From Oopsacas minuta (Eukaryota; Animalia; Porifera), in assembly GCA_024704765.1 (NCBI GenBank), contig JAKMXF010000340.1, positions 159,911-223,910 of the forward strand: a DNA stretch of 64,000 bases, written 5' to 3'. Positions within the stretch are counted from its first letter, which is position 1. Every line of letters starts with the position of its first letter. The translations under genes were made by a program, and so were the position numbers. The notes beneath the pieces were generated by a model that had not been told where the DNA came from, did not search any database, and worked only from the letters and a program-made list of their open reading frames with translations. Positions 36,706 to 60,700 of this stretch are shown here, piece by piece.

Positions 36706-39700
36706 TTATAATCTAGTGTCTCTAAATCCAGATTCATCTTGTGAAAAGTCTACATCAGAGGATTGCATCACTTTTGAAGCATTAAGCTAGAGTGTATATA
36801 TATATTTAAAGAGAAGGCTATATTCTTATGAAATTCACAAATAGTTGGTAATATTGAATAATAAGAACTATACTAATTGACGGAAGTTTCGCTAGCTTAG
36901 CTATGCTCAAGCCTGATAGTTCTTTGTACAGCTATTAATATAACTAACCTGAGTAAGACGAGGGGAGTATCTAGCACTAGGAGGAGTCCTTATAGAATTC
37001 CCATATGATAAGCTAGAGTTAGCAATAGAAGCTTGTTTGGAGCGAGATGAGAAGTCTAACGTATTAGAACGGTTCTCCTACACACAAATTAATATCAAAA
37101 TTCTGAATCTACGAACAAAATTTTTAGCTAGAATGGCCCGCTTAAATACTCTTCCTTTGCTATGATCGTAATAAACCGGAGGTTTTTGAATACAGTAGAA
37201 TCTCAATTTAATGGCTATTACAATTGCGAGATGAGGCGACGATCGATAAAGTGAGGCGGTAACTGGCCTCTTTGCCTCAATGCCAGTTATGCCATTGCTT
37301 TGCTCACCACATTTCTAGAATCGGCCCGATCTTATCAAAAATTGCATGCACTTCCAGATAGCATCCTTACGAAGTGACTATACCCCATGAGCTTCCTTAC
37401 CCAGTAGCGGTCCTAGGGGTTGGAAAATAGGTTATTGGACAAGGTTTTGATTTTGTGCCTCGGGCAGCCGCGGGTTTGCCAGATACTCTCCAAACGTTCC
37501 TGTTCCTGTAACATAGAATGTATTTGTGGAATTGAAAAATTAAGACAGGACAAGTTGAGATATCTAGACCTAACTAAAATCCAAATTTGGTCAAAACCAG
37601 GAGCTGTTTTCGCTGGATAGCATAAGCGCAAAGTAGGCCCATGAGTCTGGGTGGGAAAAGATGACGTCATGCCAACCCGGCCTATACCCTATGTTGTAAT
37701 GGAGTCAAACCGGGTGGGCACGTGCTCACCAAAATAGCACCTAGTTGCGCGTAAACTTACAAGCATTAAAGACTCCTGTAGTGTAAGGTCAGAGAGTGGA
37801 TCATCAAGCCTACCATTGGTAGCAGCTAATAGTGGAGTGTGTGACTGTGTTCTGTACTTCTCTCTTTCCTTCCTTGAAGAGAGTATCACAATACAGAATA
37901 CGAACAGACACAGGAACAGAACTAAAAGAAAAACATGGCGATAAAGTAACAGGGGTGTAGGAAGCGAGTTCTGAGGCGAACTTAGTTGCCCGGCTTCAAG
38001 GCCGTGAGTAGTTAATGATTCGTTGATAAGTTATCACGAGTACTTAGTTATGGAAAATTTTCAGATGAAAGGGTGGATAGGTAGGAGCTGCCCTGTTAAA
38101 CTTTTAAGAAAGATGGTCTATTATATTGACGGAATGTAATATCCATCCCTCCGTGTGTTTGATCCTGTGAAATCTAACACTCCAATTAACATGAAAATGT
38201 GAATACAGGTATATTGTAGAGTATAGATGTGTACCTGGGGTCTAGAATTTCCGAAAATGAGAATTTTTCATACCTTTTGGCAATAAAACATTACACTTTT
38301 GAAAATAGTTGAAATTAAAGATTCTAATCCAGATAATACGAATTAGTGGATTGAAAAGTGTTTCGAGAATTCCACTCATTTTGGGCAAACTGTATGTGAA
38401 AGAATGCACACCAAATTAACTGTATAACATTTCTAAACTGACCTGCCAAGAATATGATCACTACAATTATTATTATGATAGCAACAAGTGAGGTAACAGA
38501 TACTGGTGTAGTTGGCGTTGTTGTTACATTAAGAGTTAAGCTTGGTGTTGTCAGTGAAGGATCTGAATGAGAAAAAATATATAACGTCTACATTATATCA
38601 GTGTTTCATAAATTTTGGTTATGTAGCGATCAGGGTTTGGTAATGACATATTTTGGAGTGTACGTGCGCTGCAGTGTGTGCACTCCTTCAAAAATGGAGC
38701 GCTGCTCCTGAATCATGAATGGAGTGTGCTCCAGGTCCCGCTCTTTGTAGCACCATAAGCTCTGTATATCGAAACAATATCAAAATATCAAAAAACAAAA
38801 TTATAGACATTTTCGATTACATTTTCAATATTTTCAGATTTTGGTGCTAATCAATTGATCACTTACCAACACAATGAGGTGCTGTCTCTATTAGAACAAA
38901 GTTCGCTTGCTCTACACTCCCTACACTGGTAACAGCCTTCACTTTGAACTCGTAAGCTAAATGAAATATTAATTAAGAATAAACGTGTAATCCTGTTGAG
39001 TAGCTGATTACTCACAAGTTGAATAAATAAGATCTTCTACTGTCTTTGTTGTAGCAATAGTAGAATCTAAAACCTGTCTATCGACAAGGAATTCAAAGTT
39101 CTTCAGTAATCCGTTGAGATGGAAAACATTAGACCAATCAATTGTCACTGTGTTACAGAGCCTGCGTACACTCAGTGTGTCTCTTACCTCAGGTTCTAGA
39201 TAATTTTCAGAATATAATTAAGTATTGGGAGGTAAGCGAGGGGTAATTGTAATAGAATGTTGATGACAGTAGAATCTACTAGGACACCGGTTAACCTGGT
39301 TAATCGGGTCACAAAAGACAGAAATAGAAACATACCAATGGTCTCAATTGATTCCCGTTAATCGGGTCAATACCTTTCTCTACGCTTAATATGGTCAAAA
39401 TGGCCTGGTCCCGATGTGACCCTATTAAGAGGAGTCTACTGTAATGACGTCACAATTACAAATTCTTCCCTAAGATTCAACCCGCAATTACTTTACAATT
39501 ACAGCAAACAAATTTCATAATAGCCCAAGAACACTGATTCCGAATATGATATTGTACAAACGTATTATGAAGATTCAATTTGTTGTTGTTGTTATGTGTA
39601 TCAAATACACAAATATTAAAAGTTCCAGAAAGTGTTCAACCGTTATATTGGCGTAATCGAGTACGCTAACCCCGAACTTTCAAGTTTTCATATGTAATTT

Positions 39701-42700
39701 GTTATTGTTCTTATGAAAACGATAATCGAGGTATAAAGTGTCAAGTTCCTAAGAATGTTCGAAAGCCGCGGAGCACAAGCAAGCGGAGCGGAGTCGTTAC
39801 TTGGATAATCCATTACAATTGCAATTACAATAGTCAGGTGAGTCTATTCAAACAAAATTGTTAAACTAACAGAACACAAACTAAAATATAGTCCGCCAGT
39901 AGTTAAGAGATAACAAACACAATCTCTGTATCAGGGACAGACAATAATATAGCCTCATGAAATTGAGAATATAATTTGAAATGAGTATCCTCATTGGATT
40001 AAAGGCTGTGAGAGACTAGTGTACGAAGAATTTATAGCAAATGATTACAAATTAGATGATAAGATATTATGGGAATGGTAAAATATGTGAAAACACAGAT
40101 CCTTCGATTATCGATACAAAAAGGTAATTTTCCATTTATAAGAAATTCGGGTATGTAGTTTACCTGCAGAATCAGTAGTATAGAATCTAGAAGGAGGAGA
40201 TTGTTGTGCTGAATGACTATTAGCTGCAACCAAGAAGAATTGGTATGTAGCATAAGGAGTCAATCCTTGAGCTGTACCAGACAGGATATCTCCTGCTCCT
40301 GTGTAGAAAGTAGTTGTAGTACCGTACTGACAACTGCCTGGATTGATGTGAGGCTGTGTGGGCTGTGGGCAAACAGACTGTGCAAGGATAGAATAACTAA
40401 AAGATTCAAGTAAATCAATTTTCAATACAGTGTCACCTCCACAAACGAGGTGCCAGAGAAACAGAAAAATGCTAGAAAGTTGCTACACTTTGTAAATACT
40501 TGACAACTTACCTGGTGAGAATTCCATTAGGTTTAGTAGGTAATACCCATGTGAATACAATTTCCCGAGCAGAAATGATGTCAGCAACTGGCGGAGATAC
40601 TCCTTCAGGTGTATACTCTCCTGTACTGAGTGCAGCTGCCTCACTAGTAGCACATCCTGCCACAGTACATGCTGTCACATTTATATAATAGATCGTGTAT
40701 GGAAGTAGGTTTGTGATAGTGGTAGTGTTCTCCGTGCCTAATAATGGAAGAGAATATCTATGATAAAGTTTGTAAGGATCTAAATGAATTCGTAACTTCG
40801 GTCATAGATAAAATATACAGCTATATATGTGCAGGAGAAGGCCAGTTTCATTGTCATCAATTTTAGAAAACGAAACTCATATTTTAGACTTTTGGTGCTT
40901 CAAGATACGTATGTATAATCCATTGCGATCACTTATAAAGCCCAAACGGCCATCTTTCATTTCATTTGGACGAAATTTAAGCAATTAGTTAGCATTAACA
41001 TATCTTGTATAATCTATAATTTCGTATACAAAATGTTTGTTAGAGATCTCTACGGTCTAGTGTTGGTATACACCAGGGTTGCCGTGGGTATGGGAATTCC
41101 ACAGAAATTCTGTGGGAATGCGATGGGAATTGTAACATCCGTACCCACGGCAACCCTAGCAAACCAGATATACGTATAAGTAATTACCTGTCAATTCTGC
41201 TACTTGCACATCATCTCTGTACACAATATAACTGGTAATAATACCATTAGTTGTTTCTGGAGGTAAAATGAAAAGTGTAATAGAAGTATGTGTGCTTGAA
41301 AGTAACTCTGGTGGAACCACATCCATCGGTATTCCCTCTACTGTACGCACCGTTTCCCATTCACTAACTGCCTGTCCAACAGTGTTAATAGCTACAACTT
41401 TATATTGAAAATCTGTATATAGCTTCAAGTCAGTGGAATTATCAATAATGAAAAGTTGATTGTATACAATTGCAACTAGTATTTCATCTGAAAAAGTTGT
41501 CTGTCCATTTACATTGAAAACTTCTCTACGGAAAACTCTATATTCTGTGATAATACCATTAGGCATATCAGGTGCTTCCCATTGTGTGAGGACAGCAGGA
41601 CCTTGCAGTGCAGTCAGTGTCGGCACAGGTTGTCCAATAGGTGTATCAGGGCTAGTAACGACTGTAGCGATCTGACTCTCTGTGCATGTAGTAGTACATG
41701 CACGTATCATAACGTTATACATTGTAAACGGCTGCAATTCAGTGACAATATACTCAAACTGTAGCCCAGTGAATACCACTGTATTTTCAACGAGTAGATC
41801 ATAACGTGTTATAAGACCATTTGGTATTTGGGGTACAGACCATTCTGCCTTGAATGAAGTGGAGGTCAACGGAGTGAGTGTAGGCGCGTCGAGTAACTCG
41901 GGTGCATCAGGCGACGTGGTTATGACAGTGCTTTGACTAGGATCACTTCTCCCTATCGAAGTATACGCACGTATTGAGTATACATAGGTTTTAGCCGGCC
42001 GTAAATTTGTATCTGCAAATTGCCTGTTCTGAGTATTGTTAGTAAACAGCACTACACTACCGTTCCTGATTACGTCATAACCAATTATAACACCATTCGG
42101 CATAGATGGTACTTGCCAAGTTACCAAAGTTGACTTACTGCTTGTAACACTGACTACAGGAGCAGGCTGTCCAGAAGGGATATACTCTAAAGTCAAAATA
42201 TTCGAAGTAGGACCTACACTACAACCTATAGCAGTACAAGCTATTATAGCAATACGGTATATAGTGTAAGGTGATAGGTTAGTTTGAGTGTGTATGAAGG
42301 GTGTTATTGTATTTGATTGATCAACGTCATCAATTGATAGCATATACGATTGTATTACACCATTTGGTTTCGTAGGAGGGTCCCATCTAACCTCTACCTC
42401 AGAGAATGACACAGCTGTAAGGCTAGGAGCGATTACGCCCTCGGGAATGCTCTCAAGTGTCTGTTCCACTGTGATCTCACTTGTAACACAACCTCCACGG
42501 CTGTTACATGCAGTAATCTGATAGCTGTAGTCCGTGAACGGGTCTAGATTAGTATCAAAATACACAAACGCATTACTCAATGATACAATAGTATTACCAT
42601 CACGTATTACGTCATAATTGGTTATTACACCATTCGGTGAGGAGGGTGTTGTCCACTGTATACGCATTTCAGTGGCGAGCACCGCTTGAACGTTTGGAGC

Positions 42701-45700
42701 CGCAATACCTTGAGGTACTCCTTCATCTGTTTGCTCTGAAATGAAATCACTCTGTGTAAAGCCAACACTGTTCTCTGCAGTGATAGCATAACTGTAGAAT
42801 GAATAAGGTAGCAGGCCTGTGTCAATGAAGTTACGTAGAGTTATATTAAATACAGTGTGTATTTGAGAAAGTGTGTTATCAGGGTCCATACGATGTATTA
42901 GAAATCTAATTATGTTACCATTCGGACTGAGTGGGAGTTGCCAAGTTATACGGATAGAAGAAGAACCTAACGTCTCAAGGAAGGGAGCATTTAAATTATC
43001 TGGTGGGATTTCCGCGGTTGTCAACACCTGTAAATCACCATTAGTGCAGCCGGCTGAAGTACAAGCTTGTAAGTATAATTCATAGTCAGTGAAAGGTGTC
43101 AAAAGTCGGTAAGTAAACGAATTCGACACACCCCTAAAAATAGGATTTACTCCAAGATATATCAGATACTCACTGATAACACCATTCGGTTTCAGAGGTT
43201 CATTCCATGATAAATCTAATGAACTACCAGATGGATCAGCTGTGTACATAATAAGCTGTAAGAGCTCAGGGCTATCTTCAGCTGTCGTCGCAGGTACCCA
43301 AGTTGTGATAACCTGACCTATACTATTATTAGCTGCTATTCTAAACTCATAACTAGATCCAGGTTCAAGATCTTGTAACTGTGTTGAGGTTGTACTACCG
43401 TTAACTGTTAACAGCAACACAGGGTCACGGTTCATTGGTATCGGGTTAAGGGGTGTGGTAATTATACGTGCGTATATGTGGTATATTAATATTATCCCAT
43501 TAGGTTGAGCAGGCTCATCCCAGTTTAATATTAAAGAGCGTGCAGTAACAGATGACACTGTAGATGCAGCGAATAACATTGGCAATGCTTCTAATGTACT
43601 TTCGGATGCTTCAGCACTTGTGACACTACCTGCGCTATTACGTACTTTCACAGTGTATGTGTAGAGTGTGAAGGCATTTAGGTTGTCAATATCTATCATG
43701 TTGATCTCAGGTGGGACTGGGATTTGTAATGGCGGTTCATTGGCTGTGGTTTGTAATAGCTCATAACCTATGAGGATACCATTGAGAACAGCTGGTGGAT
43801 TCCATGATACACGTATTGAAGATGAAGATAACGCCAATAGAAATACAGGATCTATTCCAATAGGTGGTGCTTCTAGTGTTGTAATTAATACTGCATTAGA
43901 GAGAGCACAGCCACTACGTGTGCAGGCTGATACACGGAAACTATACTGTGTAAATGGTATTAGCCCGGTACGTGTAAAGCTGAGCTGTGTTGTATCTGTT
44001 AATGTAACGAAATTGACGTTATCCTGATACAAATCGTATTGTATTATTACACCATTAGGAAGTGTGGGTGGTATCCATTCGAGGAAAACAGCTGTAGCAT
44101 TCACAGCTGTCAAAATAGGCGGGTCTAACCCAGAGGGCGTCGAATCGGGTGTAGATACTGTAGCGGCCCCACTAATGACAGAACCTACATTGTTAAAAGC
44201 CTCGATTATGTAGCTGTAGGTTGTACTAGCAAATATGTCTGTGTCTATATACGTGAAATTAGTAGTGTTCAATATTATGACGTCATTTTTGCGTAGCAAA
44301 TAATACTGTATTATACCATTAGGTGAACTGGGTGGTGACCAACTTATCTCTAATTCATCAAATCGTATAATCGTTAGAATAGGCGGATCGATTGTAGTAG
44401 GAGGTATTTCAGAGGTAGAGAATGTAGTCGGTGAGCTGGATACACATCCAAAGCTGTTACAGGCTTCTAGAGTGTATGTGTATTGAGTGAATGCATTTAG
44501 TCCTGTAATAGTAGTTGTTAGTGCAAAACCTGTAAATATTGTGTTGCCATCTGAATCGTATATTGTGTAATTAACAATGATACCGTTAGGAAATAAAGGG
44601 TTAGTCCATGCTAATTCGATGCTATTCGGAGTGATTAGAGTTGCGAAAGGTATATCTAATAACTCGGGAGTACTTTCAGATGTTTTGGTAGAAACTGCGT
44701 CACTTCTTGTACAACCAATAATAGTGCAAGCAGATATCATATAAGTAAAAGTGGTGAAGGGCAATAAATTCATATCTGTGTATTGAGTGCTATCATTGAC
44801 GGTAGCTATTTCTTGGCCATCTCTATACACAATATAACTTATGATAATGCCATTAGGTTGTGTGGGGGCTGTCAATTGGATTCGTATTGCAGTAGCTGAT
44901 AACACTGTAAGAATAGGTGGGTTAATATCAGTTGGAGTGAATTCAAGAGTAAGTATAGAAATCTCAGGGCTAATAGTCTCTCCTGCTGCATTTGACACCC
45001 CAACGTATGCTAGATAATTAGTGAATGGTGTCAACCCTGTTACACGATATGATAAATTGAGGCCAGTGAAAACCGCAGTTGTCTGATAACAAATTTGTGT
45101 ATTAGAATTCAATAAGTCAATACTATCGCATGTATGTGTTGAAAATGGAAAATCGCATCGATTACAATAGGCTGTGCTTGACTGTGCATTAGGACACGTG
45201 ACACCTGTACCACAGTTGGCACCAGTTGATGTAGACCTATCAGAACATGTCTCCAGCTGTGAATTATAACCACGGTTATTACAACATGATAATTGTGAAG
45301 GGATTGCCGTGACGTCACAACACTTCTCATCTGCGTAAGATTTATTTGCTGGACTTGCGTATGAGATTACCTAGGAATAATAGAGAAATCAGCAAATATT
45401 CTCAAAACTAAACACAAAGCAGGCGAAATATTACGCCCTAGACAACTGTGATATTGTTCCGCCATTCACTCAATTTTCAGCATTGAAGAGTAAAATTTCT
45501 AAATTAAAAGATTATACCGCTGGCCGGCCGGCTACCCCATAATAATAAGTGCCACCCTAGGAGATTTCCTAGTTCGCTTAATGGAAGGACTGGTATTGGA
45601 TTTTCCCCATTTTATCGAGATTTTTAGATTTTATTAGGTTAGCATTAGTAAAGTATAGCCGTCACAGTAAATAATACATCTAACACGTTTCGAGGAATAC

Positions 45701-48700
45701 TGTAAATAACACTTACCCTCTCTACCCCATTACTTGCCGCACAACACAGAGTTACATTATCAAGCTCATAACTCGTATCACAGCAAACATATCCATCTCT
45801 ACTAGAATAAGTAACTCCATTACAACAGACTGTATCAACATTAGATACAACTGTTTCTCCACAACACATTGTATTTATGTGCTGTGATACAACGTTACCT
45901 CCACAGCACATAAAGTTATCGTTATCAGTGTAGGGAGTTGTACCGCAACAAGCATCACCTATAGAGTGAATATACTATTTGATTTACAAGGATAAAAGTG
46001 CAGTACAGTTCGCATAATAGAAATTTGTGTATTCGCAAGGGAAATTCAAATAGGATTAGCTGATCGGCGAACTATACTGCATTTATAGATCCAGTTGATA
46101 CGAATAACGATAAGACGAATATTTTGGCTGTTAATTGGTGTACGCGTTCTAATAGTATATGTACGAAAATTCAAAGACCCTGTCTTCCGAGTTCTACTGT
46201 ATATAGTATTGGAAAAAAGTGTTCAAGATTATCATGTGAATCCATTGCTCCAAATTTGATCTCCCTTACCTGATCCTACATTAACTGTATTTCCATCATC
46301 ACAGCAGATATCTCCAGGTCCTATAAACTGATACACACCTCCACAACAACCATAATCACTTTGGACATCGTAGAAACTACCTCCACAACACACATCACTA
46401 ACTGACACACGTTCAATATAAGTACCACCACAACATGCGTGATTATCAGCTTGAGGGTACAGTGTATCCTCACAACACACATGTGTTGATGCTGTATAGC
46501 ACTGATATCCACAACTTGACTGTCCTAATGGACAATCTACATAGTCACATGTATCTTGATCTGTGCTCTGTGAGCAGGGTATCACATAGCGGAGATAGAG
46601 AGAATAGCTTGTAATATCTCCGTTTGTGACAGTGGGAGCAGCTAAATAGAGTTAAATAAACAAGTGTTTCTCAAAGTAGCCCCTGTGATTATAATAGTAG
46701 GGACAAAAACTTAGAAATGGTTGATATTATGATAAGCAATTTGTGGGTGCTGGCAAAATATACATGTATAATTATGGACCCAGGCGAAGAAGATTGAGAA
46801 ACTTCACAAAATCTTCGGTTAGCTGTGTACGTATTACCTACCCCAATTAGCAAGGAATGAATCATGTTGTACATCTGATACATTAGGAGAATCAAATCCA
46901 GTGGGAGGAGATTGTAGAGTACGAATTGAATAGGAATCACTTGGAGTACATTCAAATCGAGTACAAGCAACAAGCTATATAAAAATAAACTAATATAAAT
47001 TATATATTGATAATGTTTACGAAAAGCGAAAGTAAAAAGCGATTAGTGGTCCCAACCTCTTCACCCGTGGTCCCCCTATACCAATTATAACACATGTTAA
47101 GGGCATCTCCCGCAGACTGCAACAGATCCTTTCATTCCTGTGGACCCCCTGCTGTCCTCCATGGACCACCAAGGGATCCATAAACCCCAGGTTGGGAAGA
47201 GTTACATTGGATATTTGAAAATTTTACTTGAGGAATAATTTTTCAATGACGGAACCAAAATATATGTACAGTGGAGTCTCCGAATAACGGACACGTTGGG
47301 GTATGGTATCTGTCCGTTGTAGAGAATTGTCCGCTCCTCGGAGACTGCTTAAGTATTAATTACATGCTTGGCGAATTCAATCCCTGCAACGAGGTTTATC
47401 CGTTGTAGGCGGTTGTCCGCTTTACGGAGTGTCCCTTTTGGGAGACTCCACTGTAAATACAAACATCTTCCAACAAACCTCAAATGAATATACTGTATAA
47501 GGCATCAATCCCATAGCTATAAACACTCCACTAAAATTATCAGTATATACAGATACACCATCTAGTATGATGTTATATGACACAATAACTCCATTAGGTT
47601 GTTCAGGCTCTACCCATTCAACTTGAATAGCTGTTGAGCTTATGGCAGTGAGTATAGGAGGGAATACACCTTTAGGTGCTCCGTCTAGTGTTGTAGCCTC
47701 AGCAATGTTGCTCGTGGCGTATCCAACTCCATTGAAGAGAATTACCTAGCAAAACAGTAAACAAGGTATAGAAATGTCTATAAACAAAAATTGATATAAA
47801 TTTGTGGTAACTAGGAATATTTTCGGCTAAGGTATGAGGAATGAAAAATTTCCAAAGCTCATTTTTGGAACTAAGGTTTGGAGAAGCCTTAGAATGAAAT
47901 CCAACTGCATTTACGAGAAATTATTATTTAGCCAATGATATTAAGATAGAAGGTTCTCAAGCCGCGCAGCGCAAGCAAGCAAGAGAAGCTGCTTGTGCGA
48001 GATTAAGTATGGGTTAAACAAACCTGAAATCTATATGTAATACTTGGATTCAGTCCAGTAACAGAAAACATATTATCTGTTCCATTGAAGAATGACATAA
48101 CAAACTGTCCAGATCCCACCTGATTGCCTATAACTTCAAAATTAACAACCTCACCTCTCACTACATCAATACTTGGTGTCATCCATTGAAGGAGAATAAT
48201 AGAGCTTGTGGTAGTAGTGGCATTGAGTGTAACGCCTGCTAATGGTGTATCAGCTAGTGTTCGTATTTGACTTGTGTTACCATATGTTATGGTGCCTGCT
48301 CCGTTGGTTACATCAAGGGAGTATTGATATTCATGGAATGGGAGAAGTGAGCTGTCATTGTAGCTTAGGAAAAGACCTATAAAATGGAAATATTCTTAAA
48401 ATACGAAATTGAAAGAATTTTCATGAAGAATGATGATAAATATCCGAAATTTTGGATAGACTAAACTTGATTAATAAGTACTCGAAGAATAGAAAATTCG
48501 AGAACTATATATCATGAAATCTGGGCAATTAATACCATTCAACACAACTTTCTGACAATTGGTATATACCTTGAGCTATCTGGACATAATCTCCACCATC
48601 TTCTCTCCTGAATAGGGTATAATACATAATCAATCCATTAGGCATTGTAGGCTCAAGCCAAGATATCACCAGCTCAGTAGATGAAACAATATCAACATTA

Positions 48701-51700
48701 ATCTCACTGAATCCAGATGACAATACTTGTCCGGTTTGGATAACAACAACATCACTCTCAGTACAACCACCAAACGTACAAGCTGTAATACTAATACTAT
48801 AATTCTGATATGGAGATAGATCGTGTAATGTGAAGCCTGTCAAGCTTGGATGTAATCCTATGATGATCAGGTTTGGTAGGTCAGTAGGTTCGTATTTGAG
48901 TATATACTCAGAGATGATACCGTTTGGCACTGCAGGTTCTAACCATATTATTTGTATTGAAGTAGGTTGTATTAGAGTTAGTGTAGGTGCTTCTATAGAA
49001 GATGGTTCTAGGAAAGAAAATGTGAGAAAAATTGAGAGAATGAGAGTCAACATACCAAAATTGCAGCTGGGGTCATTTCTTAAAAAATTACCATCAATGA
49101 ACTTGCAGGGACTTATGTGACACTATGATATACTGTATATATAAATTCTAGAGCATTTGTACACACCTTTAAGAAATACAACATTTTGCCAATTTAGAAT
49201 CCAAACGAGAAATATTTTCCCAAAAATCGCAATGACTGAAGGTGACGCATGGTGCATGAGAAAGGGAATCCACTGTGTAGGAAGTTGGAAGAGTTGTAAA
49301 ATTATAAATAGGAAGGGAAAATGTATGCAAATATTTTCAATGAACTAATATACTACAGTCAAAAGACATTCAAGAAATGAAAAACGTCAAATTAATCCAA
49401 AATCGTTATAGCTGAGGCATTTCGTAAATTTTGATTGCATACAAATAATCGCAAACATTTTACTCAAAATAAGTAAACTTACGCGTTTGAAGAGTGGTAA
49501 TATTCGCATACGAACTAGCTATACTCCCAGCACTATTCACAGCCACAACACGGTAATGTACAAGTAGAAATGGTGTAAGCACATTCTCATCACTATCGAT
49601 ATACATAAGCGTATCATTAGCATCAAGTGTTGCTATTTGTATAGCTGCATCTGGTGGTAACAGTCTTTCTACGAAGTATGTATGTATTATGCCGTTAGGG
49701 GATAACGGGGTGTCCCAGCGTATTACTACTGAAGTAGATGATGAACTCTCCAGACTAGGTGGAGATAAATTCTCAGGAGCTGAAAGAATAAATAAAATAT
49801 AATGAAATCAGGTGAGTGAGAATTAAGTATCATGCGCTTCAAAACATCAATAAATGTAGGAAACAATTTTCGCGAAGAATATTAAGTCAGGAATGTAAGT
49901 GACTGCGCACAAGTGGCGGAACAAATACTAGGTGCATTATCTGGCGCTATCTACACCACTGGATCAGATTCAGATCCTAGATTGAGGGATTTTCTTAGTT
50001 TAACCAATAGTCAAAATTCTGACAGAGCTTACACACCCCAAAGGGAGAGCTCCCATAATGTAATGAGTGTAGTGTTCAATTCAGCACCGTTTTAAGTCCC
50101 CAATCTGCCCCTTGTCCAATAAATGTAAAACATTAATCATCTCCTTTATCAACATCTAAAATATAGTAGAATACTACATTCTTGAGATATTACGTATATT
50201 AATGGATAAAATAATCATTGGGTCATCTCCTAAAAGTAAAATATAAGTGGGAAAAGTTTGTACTATTAAATCTCAAATCTATTAGAATTTCTCATATTAC
50301 ACGATAAAGAACAACATTACGTCATCTCCTAGTAAATTTCAGGGAAGACATAAATGTTGAGTGAAATTACAATAAATTACATCATCTCCTAATAGTAATA
50401 TTCTGACAATCAAGTAATAGTATATGTCCAAGCTAATGAGTATAAAATCAAGTTTCCTAGACAGAAATACAAATAAGGTTTTGGAATTATTGTTACAAAT
50501 TTCAGAAAAAAGTTAATTTGCAATCAGTGACACTGATCTCGGAATAGTCATGAAGAAAATCGGTAATATATGCCTATTGTTAGGTTTGGTGACGTATTTG
50601 TATTATTATGCAGTGGTTGAAGCTGTCGATTGTTCTACTGGAGCAGGATATTGTAATTATTATAGTAACTATCTACGGTGCTACATCACCAATAATGAAA
50701 CTCAGGGTATTAAGAGTTTGTTAAGTTACTGTAGCGGTCAGAGCACAGGATTTGTTACAATATATGTGTACAAAAACTACCTATCAACAGTATACGGGAA
50801 TCTAATCATTGATATAGAATTAGCCTCAAATATCCAATTTTTATACATTTACTATTCCAGAGATCAAGACAATATCCGTTTAACTACATCTAGTCAAAAT
50901 ACTGGATTAACGAGGATATATAGTAACTATCATATCCAGCTCGAGTCTGGTAACTTTTTCAATTACTTCACAGGTCTAAAGTCTATCTACACGAGTTATT
51001 GTATTACAAAAGAAACACCATCTTTCACAAATCTGCAATATCTAACTTATCTCTTCGCTAGAATAATCGGTTCGTCCACGCGTACATTTGATAACACAAT
51101 CGTTAGAGGATTATCAAACTTGGTTGTCCTAAGTTTCTATAACTCGGATTTCAATGGAATAACTACAGGATCATTGGATGGCTTGAACTCGTTAACTTTT
51201 CTGAGCTTCCAAAACAATAAATTAAGTAGTATTGAGGATGGAACATTCGATGAACTCCCAAGCCTATTAACACTCCATCTTCAAAATAATGGACTAAGGA
51301 TTACCTCAAATAATGTTTTCGAAGGTTTAAATGAACTGACAGAAATGAGATTAGATGGGAATCCAGGATTTCCTATTGAAGCACTGATACATACAAGATC
51401 TCTAAGGTATGTGAACTTACAGTACAATGAGTATCATACGCTAGAGCCGTATGTATTCCAGCAAATGAAATCACCAAGCAGCATCCATATATATTTAAAC
51501 GACCCGTTCATCTGCGACTGTAGATTACAATGGACCTCAATTGTATCGCAATATGGAGTATATATATATTATGGATTATGTTCTGAACCAAACATTTTCT
51601 CCCAAAAGTCTATAACTAATACACAGTTGTATTCAAATTGCTCACAAACAGAATCTTATCAATGCTTTAACAAATCGATAACCTGTCCTAGTAATCAAGT

Positions 51701-54700
51701 ATGTCATAATACACAAGATGGTTACTTTTGTAATTGTCCAAGAGGATATTCACTGCATAATTCAGGAGAATGTAGAGACTTCGATGAATGTGATGAGGAA
51801 ACTGAATGCGAGCATACCTGTGACAACACACAAGGTTCATACCATTGTGGATGTGAAGAAGGATACGAGCTAGCTACTAATGGGTATGACTGTGAAGATG
51901 TTAATGAGTGTCAGGAATGGAATGGAGGATGTGAGTTTGGTTGTAGCAATTCCATAGGTTCATATCAGTGTTATTGTGAGTATGGACACAAACTTTATAA
52001 CGAAACTCAATGTGAGGAAAGTATAGAATGCGAATTAATGGGAGATAGTTACAATACTTCCCTGGGAAGTAGTTTTACTTGTAAAGGGGGATTCAATATA
52101 TCCATCTTCAACCTTTCTTGTCTGAGTGTAAATCCTCAAGAAATCATTCTATCTAGCGAAACTACATCTCAATCAACAATCCTGTCAACAAAATCTGAAT
52201 TTGGGTTGGCCATCCCAGCATTAGGGCTAATGAGTATTTCGTTAGTCTTCAATGTATTTCAACTAATCGTTATCATATGCTTACTCGTTTTTGTTATAAG
52301 AAAGATGAACACAATGCAAGGTGCCTCAAAGCTAAAAGATGCAAATGATCCTCATATCCACAGCAATCCGTATTACAATGAAGCAATGTATAATTCAATT
52401 GATGAATTGGAAAATCAAGAAAGTTCTACAGCAGTTACTGGCGAGACGAAGGCAAATCTAAAGAATCTTCCCAAGTTTCTGGCACCTCAAAATTATCCTG
52501 GGATGCAAGATGAAATTGCAGATTATGAGACTTTGTAATATAGCCAAGTTTCTCAAAGCTATTACGGACATTAGTTTATTAAACAGGACTAAACTATAGG
52601 TTTGTCCTCATAGTGTGATTACATAGGTCTCCCCAGTATTGTATATTTGTTAGGTTTACTCTTGTATTTGAGTGTGATGATAGTTCTTAGATTAGATACC
52701 TGTATTTGTCAGGGAATGTCGTGTTTGATTAATTATTAGTTGTGTGCTCTATCTTTGCTTTATATTACAATTAATGGGATGACAATAACTAGCAGTAGGG
52801 GTGGTATATACTGTTACGGCGAGAATCGTACGAAATTTCACGTAACATTTACTTTTTTGCCTTGAAGGTTTCAACATCTATGTGTTCAGAGAAGAAATGT
52901 TACGACTTTAGTATAACCGGTGTCAGAGGGGCAGTGGTCCTCCGGGTGAGCTGTCCCCCCGGACTTGTGGCACTAGGGTGATATGTCCCCCGGACCTCTG
53001 GCACTAGGGTCAGTAGTCCGAGGGACATCTGACCCAAAGTGGGGACTACTTACCCTAGTGCCAGAGGTCCGGGGGGACACTCCACACTAGTGCCATTCGT
53101 CGGCGGGACTCCTTGCCCTAGTGTCACTAGTCCGGGGGACATTTGGCCCTAGTGCCACTAGTCCGGGGGGACAGAATTTAGGGAGGACACATGACACTAC
53201 CACACAGGGAATAAATAACCATGAATTATACATATATTATAAAGTTGAAACCTGTATAATGTTAGTATAATTCATATACATATATTATACAGGTTTCAAC
53301 TTTATAGTATATGTATAATTCATAGAAAAATTTAGTGAAGGCATAAATATTGTGTGAAATCACAATAATTTACATCATCTCCTATAGAAATATTCTAACA
53401 ATCAAGTAATAGTTGTCCAAGCTAATGAGTATAAAATCAAGTTACCCAGGCAGAAATGAAAATAAGGTTTTGGAATTATTGTTACAAATTTCAGAAAAAA
53501 GGTAAATTGCAATCAGTAATACTCATCTCAGAATAGTCATGAAGAAAATGGGTAATAAATGCTTGTTGTTATGTTTAGTGATATGTTTGTATTGTTATGT
53601 TGAGGTTGAGATGTCGGATTGTAGAAATGAAGCAGGTTTTTGTGATTATTACAGAAGCTATCTCGAGTGTTACATTTTCAATAATGAAACTCAGTATATT
53701 AAGAGTTTGTTAAGCTACTGTAGCGGTCAGAGCACAGGATTTGATATCATAATTGTGTACAAAAACTACGTATCAAGAGTATACGGGAATCTAATCATTG
53801 ATATAGAATTAGCCTCAAATATCCAACGATTGAAAATTTTCAATCTCAAAGATCAAGATTATATCCGTTTAACTACATCTAGTCAAAATACTGGATTAAC
53901 GAGGATATTTGTTAGTAGTAGTTATAATATCCAACTCGAGTCTGGGAACTTTTTCAATTACTTCACAGATCTAAAATCTATCTTCGTGGGTTATTGTATT
54001 TCAAAAGAAACACCATCTTTCACAAATCTACAATATCTAACTTATCTTAGCGTTAAAATAGTAGGTGTGTCCCTACGTACATTTGATAACACAATCGTTA
54101 GAGGATTATCAAACTTAATTTACCTAAGTTTCCATAACTCGGATTTCAATGGAATAAATAAAGGATCATTGGATGGGTTGAACTCGTTAACGCTTCTGAG
54201 CTTCCAAAACAATAAATTAAGCATTATTGAGGATGGCACATTCAGTGAACTCTCAAGTCTGTTAAGACTCAATCTTCAAAATAATGGAATAAAGATTATA
54301 TCAAATAATGTTTTCGAAGGTTTAACTGAACTGACATACCTAAGATTAGATGAGAATCCTGGATTCCCTATTGAAGCACTGATACATACAAGATCTCTAA
54401 GGGATGTAAACATAGAGTACAATGATTATCATACTCTAGACCCATATGTATTCCAACAAATGAAATCACTAAGCAGAATATATTTAAGTGATCCGTTCAT
54501 CTGCGACTGTAGTTTACAATGGACGTCAATTGTATCTCAATATGGGGTAAATATAAATAATGGATTTTGTTCTGAACCAAACAATTTCCTCCTAAAGTAT
54601 ATTACAAATCCAAAGTTGTATACAAATTGCTCACAAACAGAATCTTATCAATGCTTCGACAAGTCTATAACCTGTCCCAGTAAGGAAGTATGTCATAATA

Positions 54701-57700
54701 TACAAGATAGTCACTTTTGTGGTTGTCCTATAGGTTATCTGCAACATAGTTCAGGAGAATGTGTAGATGAAGATGAATGCGAAGTGGTAACTGAATGCGA
54801 GCATGCCTGTGAGAACACAAAAGGTTCATATAATTGTATATGTGAAGAAGGATACAAGCTAGCTAAAAATGGATACGACTGTGATGATGTTAATGAATGT
54901 CAGGAATGGAATGGAGGATGTCAGTTTGGATGTAGAAATACTATAGGTTCATTTGAGTGTTATTGTGAGCTAGGACACCAACTCCATAATGAAACTCATT
55001 GCGAGAGTAAGATACAATGTGACGTAGTAGATAGTAATGGCTCTCATGAAAATAGTTTCAAATGCCAAGGAGGATTCAACCTTACAATCACGAATCTGAC
55101 TTGCTCAAAAATGAGTGATACTACTCGACATGTTACAACCGTTGCTATAAAAGTGACAACAAATACTACGAAAGTAATATGTGTTCTATCAGTTATCATT
55201 GGAATTCTACTCATTTACATAGCAAGACAGAAGAGAAGATCGCAGAATGTCATGACAATTGGACAAGAAACCAAAAACATGGGAATTATTGCAAAAGATC
55301 GCAATATTCTCACAAACATCACTGCTGATTGTTATAAACATTCCATGATGCCTACCAAGGATATGTTTCCTCATCCGAGAAGTATAGGACAGCAAGATAC
55401 TGTCGATATCGAGAACAATAAATGACATCCCAGTTACCATTGACTCTATTTGATATTATCTATAACTATAGGTTAACCCTCATAGTGTGTATATTTACTC
55501 CTCCCCGGTAATGTATACAAGATACTCACTACCTTTAAGCTCTGTATTCCTATTTAGTCAGGGATTATTATGTTTATGATTATACTCGGGGGAATGGCAG
55601 TAGCTGACTATATATAAATCGATTTTCCATTATAGGTTAAACAAGCCTAAACGGCCCAACTCTGCTTAAGAAGCTATAGTGGTTGGTGACTTATTAAGAA
55701 ACCACTGCTTTACCCGTTATGATACAAGAGAAATAGGAAACTTTGTGCTTGTGGCAAATATTTTAACAATGTAATATACATTACTAGTTCGTTGAAAACT
55801 ATATCTAGGACTGGACCTAATTATAATTCAAGCAAATGTATTTACCAAATTTACTTCAATATTCGTATTGGGTGATTCTTTGCACGAAAATAGGAATATT
55901 ACGAACACTATTCAATATATATACAGCGGAGTCTCCAAATAACGGACACGTTGGGGGCATAGTTACTGTCCGTTGTAGAGAATTGTACCTTCTCGGAGAC
56001 TGCTTAAAAAGTAATTACATGCTTGGAAAATTCAATCCGTGCCATGAGGTTGTCCCTTGCATGGAGTTGTCCGCTTTTCGGAGTGTCCGTTTTGGGAGAC
56101 TCTACTGTATATAAAATCAAATGTGTTTAGAGTCTATTGGAACACTTAGTAATGTATACTTTCTGACTTCAGTCAGCCAAATGGTAATCAATCCCCTGGG
56201 ATCATTGCTAAGATCTATAATATGATTACATGATACAGGTGTAATACTAAACTCTATGCTAAGAGTCAGCAATCATAAGTAACAAAAGTACGGGTAGTAT
56301 ATATTATTACATATATGATAGGTATTAGTCTCCAATGTTGTGAGGGTAATACTCAGGTTATAAATACAATAATCTCTGAAGAAATAATACAAACGCATCG
56401 AAGACAAATATACAAGAACTCTGTTAGTGGCTGAAAACTAAAAGTAATAGTTACTCGTTATGAAGAAGGAGGTAATATATGTCTGTTGTTAGGTTTGGTG
56501 ATATGTTTGTATTGCTATGTTGAGGTTGAGATGTTAGATTGTAGTAATGAAGCAGGGTATTGTAATAATGGTACTGACAATCTCAATTGTTACATTTCCA
56601 ATAATCAAACTCAGTATATTAAGAGTTTGTTAAGCTTCTGTAGCGGTCAGAACACAGGATATGTTTCAATAGCTGTGATCAAAAACTACGTATCAACAGT
56701 ATACGAGAATCTAATCATTGATATAGAATTAGCCTCAAATATCCAATATTTATCCATTTCCAATTACATTTACAAAGATCAAGATACTATCCGTTTAACT
56801 ACATCTAGTCAAAATACTGGATTAACGAGGATATATGTAAATAGTAACTATCATATGCAACTCGAGTCTAAAAACTTTTTCAATTACTTCACAGGTCTAA
56901 AAGACATCTTCGTGGGTTATTGTATTTCAAAAGAAACACCATCTTTTACAAATCTACAATATCTAACTTATCTTAGCGTTGGAATAGTAGGTTCGTCCAC
57001 GCGGATATTTGATAACACAATCGTTAGAGGATTATCAAACTTGATTTACCTAAGTTTCTATAACTCGGATTTCAATGGAATAAATAAAGGATCATTGGAT
57101 GGTTTGAACTCGTTAACGCATCTGAGCTTTAGAAACAATAAATTAAGCATTATTGAGGATGGTACATTTAGTGAACTCTCAAGTCTGTTAGGACTCCATC
57201 TTTCAAATAATGGACTAAGGATTACCTCAAATAATGTTTTCGAAAGTTTAACTAAACTGACAAAACTGAGTTTAGATGAGAATCCAGGATTCCCTATTGA
57301 AGCACTGATACATACAAAATCTCTAAGGTCTTTAAACTTACAGTACAATGATTACCATACTTTAGACCCATATGTATTGCAGCAAATGAAATCACTAAGC
57401 ACTATATATTTAAACGACCCGTTCATTTGCGACTGTAGATTACAATGGACGTCAATTGTCTCGCAGTATGGGTTAAATATAAGTAATGGATTTTGTTCTG
57501 AACCAAACAATTTCCTCCTAAAGTATATTACTAATCCACAGTTGTATTCAAATTGCTCACAAACAGAATCTTATCAATGCTTTAACAAGTCTATAACCTG
57601 TCCAAGTAATCAAGTATGTCATAATACACAAGATGGTTACCTTTGTAGTTGTCCAAGAGGATATTCACTGCACAATTCAGGAGAATGTAGAGACTTCGAT

Positions 57701-60700
57701 GAATGTAATGAGGAAACTGAATGCGAGCATACCTGTGTCAACACAGAAGGTTCATACCATTGTGTATGTGATGAAGGATATATGCTAGCTACTACTAATG
57801 GATATGACTGTGATGATGTTAATGAGTGTCAGGAATGGAATGGAGGATGTGAGTTTGGTTGTAGAAATTCCATAGGTTCATATCAGTGTTATTGTGAGCA
57901 TGGATACCAACTGTATAACGAAACCCATTGTGAGGAAGGTATTGAATGCGAATTAATGGGAGATGCTTGCATTAATCCCATAGAAAGTAGTTATAATTGC
58001 AAAGGGGGGCTCAATGTATCGATCTTTAACCTTTCTTGCCCTAATATGAATTCTCAAGGAAACATTGAATCAAGTGAAACTACAGCTCTATCAACAGTAG
58101 GGCTTATGAGTATTTCGTTAGTCTTCAATGTATTTCAACTAATCGTTATCATATGCTTACTTATTTTTGGTATAAGAAAGATGAACACAATGCAAGGTGC
58201 ATTAAAGTCTAAAGATGCAAAAGATCCTCATATCCACAACAATCCTTATTACAATGAAGCAATGTATAATTCAATTGACGAATTGGAAAATCAAGAAAGT
58301 TCTACAGCAGCTACTGGCGAGACGAAGGCAAATCTAAAGAAACTTTCCAATTTTCTGGCACCTCAACATTATCCCGGGATGCAAGATAAAATTGCAGATT
58401 ATGAGACTTTGTAACATAGCCAAGTTTCTCAAAGCTATTACAGACATTAGTTTATTAAACAAGACTAAACTATAGGTTTGTCCTCATAGTGTGATTACAT
58501 AGGTCTCCCCAGTATTTTGTATTCACTAAGTTTACTCTTGGATTTGAGTTTGATAATATTTCTTAGATTTGATTCCTGAATTAGTCAGGAATTCTCTAGT
58601 GTGATTACTATAAGTTGTATGCTTAATCTTACTCTCATATGGCTCATGAGTTCAACGGGACATTATTTCTAAAGGAAATTGGGTAATATGGATTTGGAAC
58701 ATTGTATGGAATAGGACTCAAATATAGCGCAACCTCTATAAGTGAGGCTTCTCCTAATTGGGCAAGGGGACATCAATTCGGGGGGCAATTTTGGTCGACT
58801 TTCATTCATTTCCATAGAAACGAACTTCTGTGAAAAAGGAATAAAGCATACTTTAAAGGAAATTATGCGATAAAATTTCTTGAATAAATATAATCAATTT
58901 TTGTGCTAAATTTGGAGAGAACGAATTTATTGCTTTGATGAATTGAATCTTTTTGGTTTCTCTGAATAAAATTTCTTTGTACAGTATACTCAACCAAAAA
59001 CCTTAGGGAACATTATAATAATCAAAATCATTAAACAACAGTCGTTAGAGGAAGTGGCTATACATATTGTCTCAAAATCTCTGGTTATAGCACATTTGTA
59101 ATTGAATTTTGTATTTATGGGAAATGGGGCTTATAAGGAGATTTGCCGTCCCGAACTCCCATACTTATAGAGGTTCTACTTTGTATCGGGATTATCACAA
59201 ACCTCGAAATCAAGTACGCAGTATACATATTTATCTACAATGCTGATAATATAAACTAATTTACCATCTTCTAGTGTAGTTACAATTACGTCATCACTCC
59301 TGAAGCATCCAACAGCAGTACAAGCTTCAATAGCAAAACTATACTGAGTGAATGGAGTAAGCAATGGAATAGTACTCTCCAGTGTTCCAGAACTAACAGT
59401 AGATATTTCTACACCATTCTGTATGATGATATACTGTATTAACTGTCCATTGGGGGTAGATGGAGGTACCCATGATAATTGTACTGATCTAGACTGTACG
59501 TCACTTATAGTAGGAGCTGGCAGATCCTCAGGGACTATAAAAGGGTTGGAAATAAATCATTTTCATTATACATCAAGCTAATAGCTACAGTGTAAATAGT
59601 GTATCGATACTCGATAGGGAATTCACATGCAACACTCTATGTAGTGAAAATTGCATAGAATATTGGAAATCGATCATTTTTGGAAATTTTGAAATACAGG
59701 TAGTTTGCATACAGTGCAACCTCGACTATCCAAACTGGAGTATTGTTCGGATAATCAAGGATACACTGTAATAGGAACAAGAAGTATAATAGCGCATTTA
59801 CAGCGTCTATCATTCGTTTATTGAAATGGGGCATTTGACAAACATTCCTATACGAGATCTTTTAGTATGTTTACTGTCATCCAATACATGAATTTGAGCC
59901 AACTTAGCCCAAGTAATCATTCTCCAAACTCTCAATTAATTCCGCTAATAGTGAATGCATGGATGTCATTCAAAACAGCAAAGCAATGCAAATTTCAATG
60001 TAATGTAGTTGGCATAGTAACAGACATGGTCCAAAGGAATTTTCAACATTTTGTTTGATAACTCTACACTTCACAAATGGATATATCACTCATTTCAAGC
60101 ATCAAATCCAAAGACAAATATACCCAGCAATTGAAAAGATAAATCATTGAAAACTAAAAATGACTATACTTTAGAACTACTTCAGATTGAACAATTCTAA
60201 GAGGATTACACCACGAAGGAGATTACTAGAAAGAGATGCTTGAAATACAGTAGACCCCGCTGAATAAAGGGACAGGATAATCTGAGTAAATAGTGCCCCT
60301 ATAAGCTCATCAAATATTTAACCATGGCATAGTTCGCATATCTGCTTGAATGATATATAGGTTTGTTTGTTTGGGTATTTCCCTTTGATTAGAGACTATG
60401 ATTGCTTGGATGTTGTCAAGGATTTTTGATGCGGGATTATAGGGGGAATTTCTATAAAGCATAAAATAAAACAAAATCCACCATCCATGGTTAAATATCC
60501 AAAAGCATATAGAGGAACGATTTTTGTCAAAACGACCCTATTAAGTGGAATCTATGTGTCTATTGAATGTGATATATTCCTAATTTGTCACAAAGCACTC
60601 TCTCAAGAAGGAAATTATCATGAACATTTGATAAAGAAAGAAGTTGAAGAACCTTTAGTAAAAGGTATAGTTATTGACGAAGCGAAGCAATGCTGTGTTG

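What the first reader, a model, noticed from the sequence alone, without database searches (positions are those of the whole stretch)
49780..59264. Three LRR-EGF receptors nested in one usherin intron, hypervariable on the LRR concave face
The 9485-nt intron holds three intronless antisense paralogs. Their LRR scaffolds are conserved, while the exposed x positions of LxxLxLxxN differ repeat after repeat: LVVLSFYNS/LIYLSFHNS/LIYLSFYNS, LTFLSFQNN/LTLLSFQNN/LTHLSFRNN, LLTLHLQNN/LLRLNLQNN/LLGLHLSNN, LTEMRLDGN/LTYLRLDEN/LTKLSLDEN, LRYVNLQYN/LRDVNIEYN/LRSLNLQYN. The N-terminal cap also varies at alternating positions. This is the signature seen in lamprey VLRs and plant LRR receptors. An LRR + Ca-EGF + TM + tyrosine-motif tail with no TIR or kinase is not a family I recognise. 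Candidate new class of diversified innate or allorecognition receptors.
Basis: partly seen in the sequence, partly recalled or inferred. Interest (0 to 1): 0.87.

Follow-up and report, generated by a model that had tools for sequence, protein, structure and literature searches.

The report
Diversifying LRR-EGF receptors in glass sponge
Three tandem, intronless genes inside an intron of a glass sponge's usherin-like gene belong to a large undescribed family of membrane receptors, and their predicted ligand-binding surface changes much faster than the rest of the protein, as is typical of receptors that recognise variable targets such as microbes or non-self tissue.

Summary
Observation confirmed. 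The window is the end of Oopsacas minuta contig JAKMXF010000340.1. An RNA-like run joins 49779|59265 exactly, so the 9485-nt GT-AG intron is real. It holds three antisense single-exon genes (662, 628 and about 650 aa): signal peptide, 11-repeat LRR solenoid with caps, one EGF and two cbEGF, TM, short tail, no TIR or kinase.

They belong to a family of 17 or more tandem genes in O. minuta and more than 100 unnamed proteins from three or more other assemblies. Named relatives (Slit, vasorin, FLRT) are only generic, at 13-19% identity.

Variation is concentrated on the xxLxLxx positions: 44/54 variable versus 104/261 elsewhere, p=2e-8. At those positions omega is 1.1-2.5 in O. minuta, significantly above 1 only in the tree-based tests. 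In an independent seven-gene array of a second species it is 3-12, significant in every test. Omega elsewhere is 0.4-0.6. The same sites are hot in both species.

Half the family ends in a C-terminal Yxx[MLIV] motif. Copy 2 has an orphan tail. The frameshift in copy 3 is absent from three of four runs. Nesting is incidental. Function (microbial or non-self recognition) is inferred, not shown. The scan's first-stage readers had flagged this family at two other loci of this genome.

The parts
49780..59264 (-). 9485-nt GT-AG intron of the usherin-like host gene, holding the three nested genes
   Evidence: X4 contig joins 49779|59265. Donor GTAAAT and acceptor TTTCAG lie on the minus strand. The public annotation splits the host into two models here.
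59265..59399 (-). Host FN3 exon just upstream of the intron (verified part)
   Evidence: X4 contig of 853 nt covers 59265-59399 with no mismatch. ORF 59176-59364 has FN3-like sequence.
49750..49779 (-). First 30 nt of the host exon downstream of the intron (verified part)
   Evidence: Unique exact match to the loose end of the X4 contig.
50550..52538 (+). Copy 1, 662 aa: signal peptide aa 1-25, LRR domain aa 27-346, EGF/cbEGF aa 363-488, TM aa 558-583, tail aa 584-662 ending DYETL
   Evidence: (AF2 pLDDT 85-98 over aa 30-490).
50628..51587 (+). Copy 1 LRR solenoid: N-cap, 11 repeats with L1 at aa 68, 95, 120, 143, 165, 191, 215, 239, 263, 285 and 309, then LRRCT. Hypervariable stripe at motif positions 3, 5 and 7
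   Evidence: Model strands begin at motif position 3 of each repeat.
53539..55425 (+). Copy 2, 628 aa: same ectodomain, but an orphan TM plus tail
   Evidence: X4 contigs with no mismatch cover the unique tail at 54883-55433.
55111..55422 (+). Copy 2 orphan stalk end, TM and 66-aa tail, with no relative in any collected family member
   Evidence: blastp/tblastn against 265 proteins and all loci found only itself. dS against copies 1 and 3 is saturated here.
56460..58414 (+). Copy 3, about 650 aa once the T seen in reads after 56469 is counted. LRR part is closest to copy 2; EGF, TM, tail and 3'UTR are closest to copy 1
50327..50549 (+). 5' flank shared by copies 1 and 2 (matches 53320-53538), a putative common promoter region
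   Evidence: Self-BLAST of the intron, 84.5% identity over 50327-52096 against 53320-55079.
36706..45112 (-). Downstream part of the host gene: 1318-aa FN3 exon (41156-45112) and last exon ending ...FRDTRL* at 36706
   Evidence: Host models of 2518 and 368+ aa carry fn3 and Galaxin_repeat.

Best explanation
The three genes are tandem duplicates of a lineage-specific family of type I membrane receptors. Each has a signal peptide, one LRR solenoid of 11 repeats with N- and C-caps, one EGF and two calcium-binding EGF modules, a Cys-containing stalk, a TM helix and a 66-79 aa tail. The family grows by tandem duplication, exchange between copies, and gain or loss of LRR and EGF modules. Residues facing outward from the concave beta-sheet (motif positions 3, 5 and 7, plus the N-cap hairpin and LRRCT edge) are driven to differ between paralogs, while the scaffold, EGF stalk and tail are conserved. 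That pattern is expected of a germline-encoded repertoire in which each copy binds a different variant of a variable ligand. The ligand is most likely microbial (pathogen, symbiont or food discrimination) and less likely conspecific tissue. Signalling is inferred to run through conserved tail tyrosines: the YNSI-type motif, YPG, and a C-terminal Yxx[MLIV] or YxN motif of the kind bound by SH2 adaptors. It would involve recruited cytoplasmic kinases, because the proteins carry no catalytic or TIR domain. Copy 2, with its unrelated tail, would then be a non-signalling or differently signalling partner. Shown: gene structure, transcription, family, fold model, site-specific diversification. Inferred: ligand class, signalling route, role of copy 2. 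The position inside the usherin-like intron is incidental.
For: Intact ORFs and domains. RNA-like run X4 has depth on the ORFs and host exon, none in the intergenic DNA, and copy-specific contigs on copy 2's tail and copy 3's 5'UTR. The family has more than 200 hits, all from O. minuta or unnamed ENA assemblies, in tandem arrays. AF2 gives a confident LRR+EGF ectodomain and TM helix. Variation is enriched at xxLxLxx x positions, p=2e-8. Omega concave/rest in O. minuta: 1.32/0.40 by NG86, 2.15/0.46 by own ML with LRT against omega=1 p=7e-4, 2.48/0.48 by IQ-TREE. Second species: 3.0/0.51 with bootstrap CI 1.75-6.65, 5.9/0.58 with p=5e-10, 12/0.58, 3.25/0.59 in independent pairs with p=1.4e-4. 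Of 34 sites hot in both species, 22 are x positions, where about 6 are expected. Tail: 59/119 members end in Yxx[MLIV](x) and 41 in YxN[MLIV](x), and the copy 1 tail type is homologous across the family. Sponges are reported to lack canonical LRR-TIR Toll-like receptors (PMC6208332, PMC8242945).
Against: There is no functional, ligand or challenge-expression data. In O. minuta itself, tree-free tests do not exclude omega=1 at the concave positions: NG86 bootstrap CI is 0.83-2.30, and independent pairs give 1.14 with p=0.30. The concave face was assigned from the motif and model strands, not from coordinates. Copies are mosaics, which can inflate tree-based tests. Tail motifs are short and degenerate, and there is no ITAM. 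The kind of run X4 is guessed from its pattern. Paralog contigs cross-map, so depth is not a measure of expression.
Confidence: 0.6

Rival explanations
1. Allorecognition or self-fusion receptors. The variable concave face mediates homophilic or heterophilic recognition between individuals of a syncytial, fusing sponge, and the important diversity is allelic.
For: Diversifying selection on a surface receptor occurs in clustered arrays. A tail-swapped neighbour (copy 2) is reminiscent of paired receptors.
Against: All the diversity measured here is between paralogs. No allele data could be obtained: the apparent variants in the reads are cross-mapped paralog contigs. Known invertebrate allorecognition genes are few, extremely polymorphic loci rather than families of tens of paralogs (own knowledge).
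Confidence: 0.12
2. Ordinary adhesion, matrix or developmental LRR-EGF receptors. Recent duplicates drift at solvent-exposed positions under relaxed constraint, with no selection for diversity.
For: In O. minuta the tree-free omega at the x positions is about 1.1-1.3 and not significantly above 1. One broken copy exists in the second species (L006 6659-8581). The nearest named folds are guidance and adhesion proteins: Slit, FLRT, LRRC4.
Against: Omega is 3-12 and significant in every test in the second species. The tree-based LRT against omega=1 gives p=7e-4 in O. minuta. The same sites are hot in both species. ORFs are intact and transcribed. The rest of the protein is under purifying selection at omega 0.4-0.6.
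Confidence: 0.15
3. Divergent orthologs of a known conserved family (Slit or vasorin), mis-seen as new.
For: Foldseek's best Swiss-Prot matches are Slit1-3 and vasorin across the LRR-EGF junction. The public annotation names members fibrillin-like or SCUBE-like.
Against: Identity is 13-19% with TM-scores of 0.4 or less. There is one LRR domain rather than four, and no LamG, CTCK or FN3. PDB sequence matches are limited to 60-130 aa of canonical repeats. The N-terminal 160 aa of irregular repeats match only family members over the whole domain. There are dozens of tandem paralogs instead of one to three conserved genes.
Confidence: 0.03

Closest known systems
Lamprey and hagfish variable lymphocyte receptors (VLR)
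   Same: A single LRR solenoid with LRRNT and LRRCT caps. Diversity is concentrated on concave-face positions of LxxLxLxxN, with Tyr, Ser, Arg and Asn rich hot sites. VLR chains are among the PDB sequence matches.
   Different: VLR diversity is made somatically from cassettes at one locus. Here complete germline genes sit in tandem arrays. VLRs lack the EGF modules and the tyrosine tail.
Expanded germline LRR receptors under positive selection (sea urchin and bivalve Toll-like receptors, plant LRR receptor-like proteins such as Cf-9/Cf-4)
   Same: Tandem expansion, exchange between paralogs, variation in repeat number, and omega above 1 on xxLxLxx solvent-exposed residues.
   Different: There is no TIR domain and no kinase. 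The repeats are of the animal Slit type with Cys caps, followed by cbEGF modules. The family is found only in O. minuta and unnamed assemblies.
Vasorin (SLITL2) and Slit
   Same: LRR domain with LRRCT followed directly by EGF modules. Vasorin is also a type I TM protein of about 670 aa. These are the best structural matches.
   Different: Identity is 13-19%. Vasorin has an FN3 domain. Slit has four LRR domains, LamG and a cystine knot and is secreted. Both are conserved low-copy genes without concave-face diversification.
FLRT, LRRC4/NGL and LRRTM synaptic adhesion LRR proteins
   Same: One capped LRR domain, a TM helix and a short tail with a C-terminal peptide motif. LRRTM is the best PDB sequence match, E=1e-24.
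   Different: They have FN3 or Ig modules instead of EGF. They are conserved orthologs in bilaterians and not expanded.

Membership tests
Slit | Four tandem LRR domains, each with LRRNT and LRRCT | tested here: not met
   One LRR solenoid of 11 repeats, aa 27-346.
Slit | Laminin-G (ALPS) domain and C-terminal cystine knot; secreted | tested here: not met
   Pfam finds only LRR and EGF families. A TM helix lies at aa 558-593 of the model.
Vasorin | LRR, EGF, FN3, TM order | tested here: not met
   No fn3 hit in any of the three copies or in the Pfam lists of 119 relatives. Identity to vasorin is 14-15%.
Toll-like receptors | Cytoplasmic TIR domain | tested here: not met
   No TIR hit. Tails are 66-79 aa and disordered in the model.
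Variable lymphocyte receptors | Incomplete germline gene completed somatically from flanking LRR cassettes | tested here: not met
   Complete uninterrupted ORFs are present in germline DNA, and an RNA-like contig is collinear with them. Somatic change itself was not testable.
Immunoreceptors with ITAM or ITIM tails | YxxL/I x6-12 YxxL/I, or [SILV]xYxx[ILV] | tested here: inconclusive
   ITAM in 0/104 tails. An ITIM-like string occurs in 19/104, a short motif that can occur by chance. A C-terminal Yxx[MLIV] occurs in 59/119.
Diversifying LRR recognition receptors (functional kind, not a homology family) | Omega above 1 confined to solvent-exposed concave positions, with purifying selection elsewhere | tested here: met
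   Met in the second species by all four tests. In O. minuta it is met by ML and IQ-TREE, but not significant in tree-free tests.
Usherin (host gene) | LamG-like, LamNT, EGF-Lam, FN3, 2 LamG, many FN3, TM, C-terminal PDZ-binding motif; about 5200 aa | tested here: inconclusive
   The window holds many FN3 exons and the ending ...DTRL*. The window ends at the contig end. The N-terminal LamG3/LamNT/EGF_Lam/FN3/LamG part (2226+ aa) lies at the end region of another contig in a compatible orientation. The three models sum to about 5100 aa, but the join was not verified. The host also carries galaxin-like repeats.

The most novel reading that the evidence does not exclude
Glass sponges belong to a phylum reported to lack LRR-TIR Toll-like receptors. 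They may have independently evolved a germline-diversified repertoire of LRR-cbEGF-TM receptors that signal through a C-terminal phosphotyrosine (YxN/YxxM-type) motif. Tail-swapped members such as copy 2 would act as decoys or counter-receptors. That would be a previously unrecognised non-self or microbe recognition system at the base of the animal tree.
Probability: 0.35. Interest if true: 0.78.

Novelty: new variant of a known kind. Interest (0 to 1): 0.64.

Why it matters
Sponge innate immunity is described in terms of NLRs, SRCRs, Ig-TIR receptors and GPCRs. Papers in the library state that sponges lack canonical LRR ectodomain Toll-like receptors (PMC6208332, PMC8242945). Neither glass-sponge genome paper mentions this family (PMC10280926, PMC10282587), and the public annotation calls its members fibrillin-like. 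A large surface LRR family with a selected, variable binding face would add a recognition system to the least studied sponge class. It would also be another independent case of LRR concave-face diversification, alongside VLRs, plant receptors and expanded TLRs. The system is tractable: single-exon genes, a confident ectodomain model, and defined hot sites for binding and expression tests.

Tried and rejected
1. Copy 3 as a pseudogene: rejected. The one-base frameshift after 56469 is absent from runs X1, X2 and X4, whose contigs span copy-specific flanks.

2. Allelic variation from the reads: rejected. The cluster of 11 'other letters' at 58162-58246 equals copy 1 at 11 of 11 sites, so it is a cross-laid paralog contig. 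The joints '56767 to 53851' and '54864 to 57751' have sides of only 30-39 nt and were not interpreted.

3. Contig 336 as a haplotig of the window: rejected. Only the paralogous genes and dispersed repeats match, at 84-88%.

4. The protein atlas on copy 1 and on the host exon gave only generic LRR or FN3 clusters with scores under 0.95.

5. phmmer of the LRR part against 1.8 billion representatives was swamped by giant generic LRR proteins. Only the single-stretch, whole-domain hits were informative.

6. The taxon of the ENA assemblies could not be determined. The listing of cluster members gave no names, and neighbouring genes were exon fragments or non-conserved.

7. IQ-TREE's partitioned run did not report omega, so the partitions were run separately.

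8. Rfam and tRNA scans of the intron found nothing.

Full report
**1. What is there**

The window is contig JAKMXF010000340.1:159911-223910 of the Oopsacas minuta (Hexactinellida) assembly GCA_024704765.1, and its right end is the contig end. Three + strand ORFs lie at 50550-52538, 53539-55425 and 56486-58414. FN3-coding exons of a large minus-strand gene lie on both sides.

In laid public runs of one sample, X1 and X2 have even DNA-like depth and X3 matches the assembly with long contigs. X4 has depth only on the ORFs and the host exon and none in the intergenic stretches. An 853-nt X4 contig stops matching exactly at 59265 and continues with letters found once in the window, at 49750-49779. 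The public annotation instead splits the host into two gene models at this intron.

The genes are collinear with the X4 contigs. Contigs that are copy-specific cover copy 2's unique tail and copy 3's unique 5'UTR, so at least these two are transcribed, if X4 is RNA as its pattern indicates.

**2. Copy 3**

In the assembly, the ATG at 56460 is out of frame with the ORF. X1, X2 and X4 contigs that span copy-specific flanks carry one extra T after 56469, which gives MKKVGNICLLLGLV...; only X3 lacks it. The frameshift is thus an assembly error or one allele, and the transcribed form is intact.

**3. Anatomy**

Pfam finds LRR_8, then EGF_CA/cEGF/FXa_inhibition, and nothing else. An AF2 model built on 56 family members is confident (pLDDT 85-98) for aa 30-490. 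It shows:
- an N-cap hairpin;
- eleven repeats whose strands start at motif position 3, with L1 at aa 68, 95, 120, 143, 165, 191, 215, 239, 263, 285 and 309;
- an LRRCT with the DPFICDC motif;
- one EGF and two cbEGF (DxDEC, DVNEC);
- a low-confidence stalk, a TM helix and a disordered tail.

The first five repeats are irregular and match no Pfam model.

**4. Family**

Copy 1 finds 204 proteins. The named ones are all O. minuta, auto-named fibrillin-like, SCUBE-like or EFEMP-like. The rest are unnamed ENA proteins at 31-60% identity, and the only other named hit is an EGF-only match to lamprey fibrillin.

O. minuta has at least 17 genes in tandem clusters on contigs 336 and 340 and two smaller contigs. 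They have 3 to about 12 EGF modules, and one gene has an internal duplication of an LRR.

ENA members come from at least three assemblies (ERZ25069837, ERZ25072730, ERZ25072740) with host-like coverage, again in tandem arrays. Their taxon is unknown.

A word-free phmmer search with the LRR part found whole-domain matches only in such family-like proteins. Everything else was giant generic LRR proteins matched repeat by repeat. PDB sequence matches (LRRTM, LGR4, LRIG1, VLR, Slit) cover only 60-130 aa of canonical repeats. Foldseek's best Swiss-Prot matches are Slit, vasorin, LRRC70, LRRC4C and FLRT at 13-19% identity. The family is not an ortholog of a known LRR family.

**5. Hypervariability**

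*Where the variation lies.* Nine close O. minuta paralogs were aligned: three from the window and six from elsewhere, at about 85% DNA identity.
- The xxLxLxx x positions are variable at 44/54 sites against 104/261 elsewhere in the LRR domain (p=2e-8).
- They carry 4 or more residues at 18/54 against 11/261 sites (p=1e-8).
- Motif positions 3 and 5 average 3.8 and 3.6 states, against 1.6 for the rest.

*Omega, concave positions against the rest of the LRR domain.*

| Method | O. minuta (9 genes) | Second species (7 genes, ERZ25069837) |
|---|---|---|
| NG86, pooled pairs | 1.32 (bootstrap CI 0.83-2.30) / 0.40 | 3.0 (CI 1.75-6.65) / 0.51 |
| Own fixed-partition GY94/F3x4 ML, partition-specific synonymous rate | 2.15 / 0.46; LRT against omega=1 p=7e-4; against equal omegas p=1e-10 | 5.9 / 0.58; LRT against omega=1 p=5e-10 |
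| IQ-TREE GY+F3X4 | 2.48 / 0.48 | 12.0 / 0.58 |
| Four (O. minuta) or three independent sister pairs, no tree | 1.14 (p=0.30) / 0.50 | 3.25 (p=1.4e-4) / 0.59 |

Its variable sites number 46/54 against 81/259 (p=2e-13).

*Shared hot sites.* Of 34 sites with 3 or more states in both species, 22 are x positions, where about 6 are expected. Most of the others are N-cap 37-43 and LRRCT 340 and 343.

*Conclusion.* The concave face is a hot surface in both species. Positive selection is robust in the second species. In O. minuta omega is at least about 1, and its excess over 1 depends on the method.

*Caveats.* The concave face was assigned from the motif and model strands, not coordinates. The ML code is my own, though IQ-TREE agrees. 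The copies are recombinant.

**6. Mosaicism**

Copies 1 and 2 share 220 bp of 5' flank. Copies 1 and 3 share EGF, TM, tail and 3'UTR (dS 0.12-0.14). Copies 2 and 3 are closest in the LRR part (dS 0.13-0.18). Copy 2's TM and tail are unrelated to anything collected. This agrees with an earlier first-stage note (s1-226784) about swapped tails; its 'paired receptor' reading remains untested.

**7. Tails**

The copy 1/3 tail type is homologous across the family, including the other assemblies. No member has a TIR, kinase or Death domain. Of 119 members, 59 end in Yxx[MLIV](x), 41 in YxN[MLIV](x) and 28 in YxxM(x). No tail has an ITAM. From established SH2 specificities (pYxN for Grb2-type, pYxxM for p85-type), I infer phosphotyrosine-dependent adaptor recruitment. 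This was not tested.

**8. Host and nesting**

The host's last exon ends ...FRDTRL*, a class I PDZ-type ending like human usherin's DTHL (own knowledge). The N-terminal usherin-type domains (LamG3, LamNT, EGF_Lam, FN3, LamG; 2226+ aa) lie near the end of contig 336 in a compatible orientation. Two more family genes lie antisense beside them. The three models sum to about 5100 aa, close to human usherin's roughly 5200. One usherin gene hosting five or more family members is likely, but the contig join is unverified.

Nesting is not a family feature. The clusters beside HSP90, BRAP2 and cobW are not nested. Glass-sponge genomes are rich in single-exon genes (9872 of 16340 in O. minuta) and nested genes (12% in A. 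vastus) (PMC10282587).

**9. Literature**

Neither glass-sponge genome paper mentions LRR receptors or usherin. Sponge immune-repertoire papers list NLR, SRCR, Ig-TIR, GPCR and lectins, and state that canonical LRR Toll-like receptors are absent. No paper in the library describes an LRR-EGF-TM family in sponges. First-stage readers of this scan flagged the same family at two other loci of this genome (s1-277151, s1-305003). Those are unverified notes, not independent support.

**10. Verdict**

The feature is real. I file it as a new lineage-specific family of a known kind, germline-diversified LRR recognition receptors, with an unusual LRR-cbEGF-TM-tyrosine-tail architecture. Function is inferred.

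Noticed in passing
window 63464-64000 (+); L003 926-1765 (-) and 16221-17081 (-): Multi-copy ORFs of about 280 aa with several hydrophobic segments (7TM-like orphans) lie beside the family genes in the usherin-like region on both contigs. Copies are 84-96% identical in DNA.
   Followed up: no
window 45645-46585 (-): Cys-rich di-cysteine repeats inside the host gene. The annotated host model carries Pfam Galaxin_repeat, which human usherin does not have.
   Followed up: no
window 55914-56119; also 47259-47465 and 60824-60902; L001 7573-7645: A dispersed repeat of about 200 bp, with word depth 3000-17000 in all four runs. It matches no Rfam family or tRNA.
   Followed up: partly
window 52951-53174 and 53221-53323: Two palindromic (self-reverse-complementary) stretches of about 220 and 100 bp in the spacer between copies 1 and 2.
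   Followed up: no
L006 6659-7945 and 8000-8581: A family member in the second species is split into two ORFs (428 and 193 aa), so it is probably a pseudogene. L006 1287-5256 and 17307-21282 are a segmental duplication with identical 785-aa genes.
   Followed up: partly
L003 10001-13372; L005 1-2899 and 10001-12862: Long family members (953-1247 aa) repeat a unit of cbEGF pair plus 'CDVVDS...NLTITNLTC' stalk three or four times. L003's gene also has a 24-aa internal LRR duplication. Module number therefore varies as well as the surface residues.
   Followed up: partly
window 49780-59264 in the public annotation (L007): The O. minuta annotation breaks the host gene into two models (2518 aa and 368+ aa) at this intron, and the database gene calls start copies 2 and 3 at internal Met residues. 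Nested genes are probably under-counted in this genome; 83 are reported against 2432 in A. vastus (PMC10282587).
   Followed up: partly
window 56767/53851 and 54864/57751: Short contigs in X1, X2 and X4 join copy 3 to copy 2 sequence ('goes back 2917'), with only 30-39 nt on one side. They could be a recombinant haplotype, another paralog or an assembly-graph artefact.
   Followed up: no
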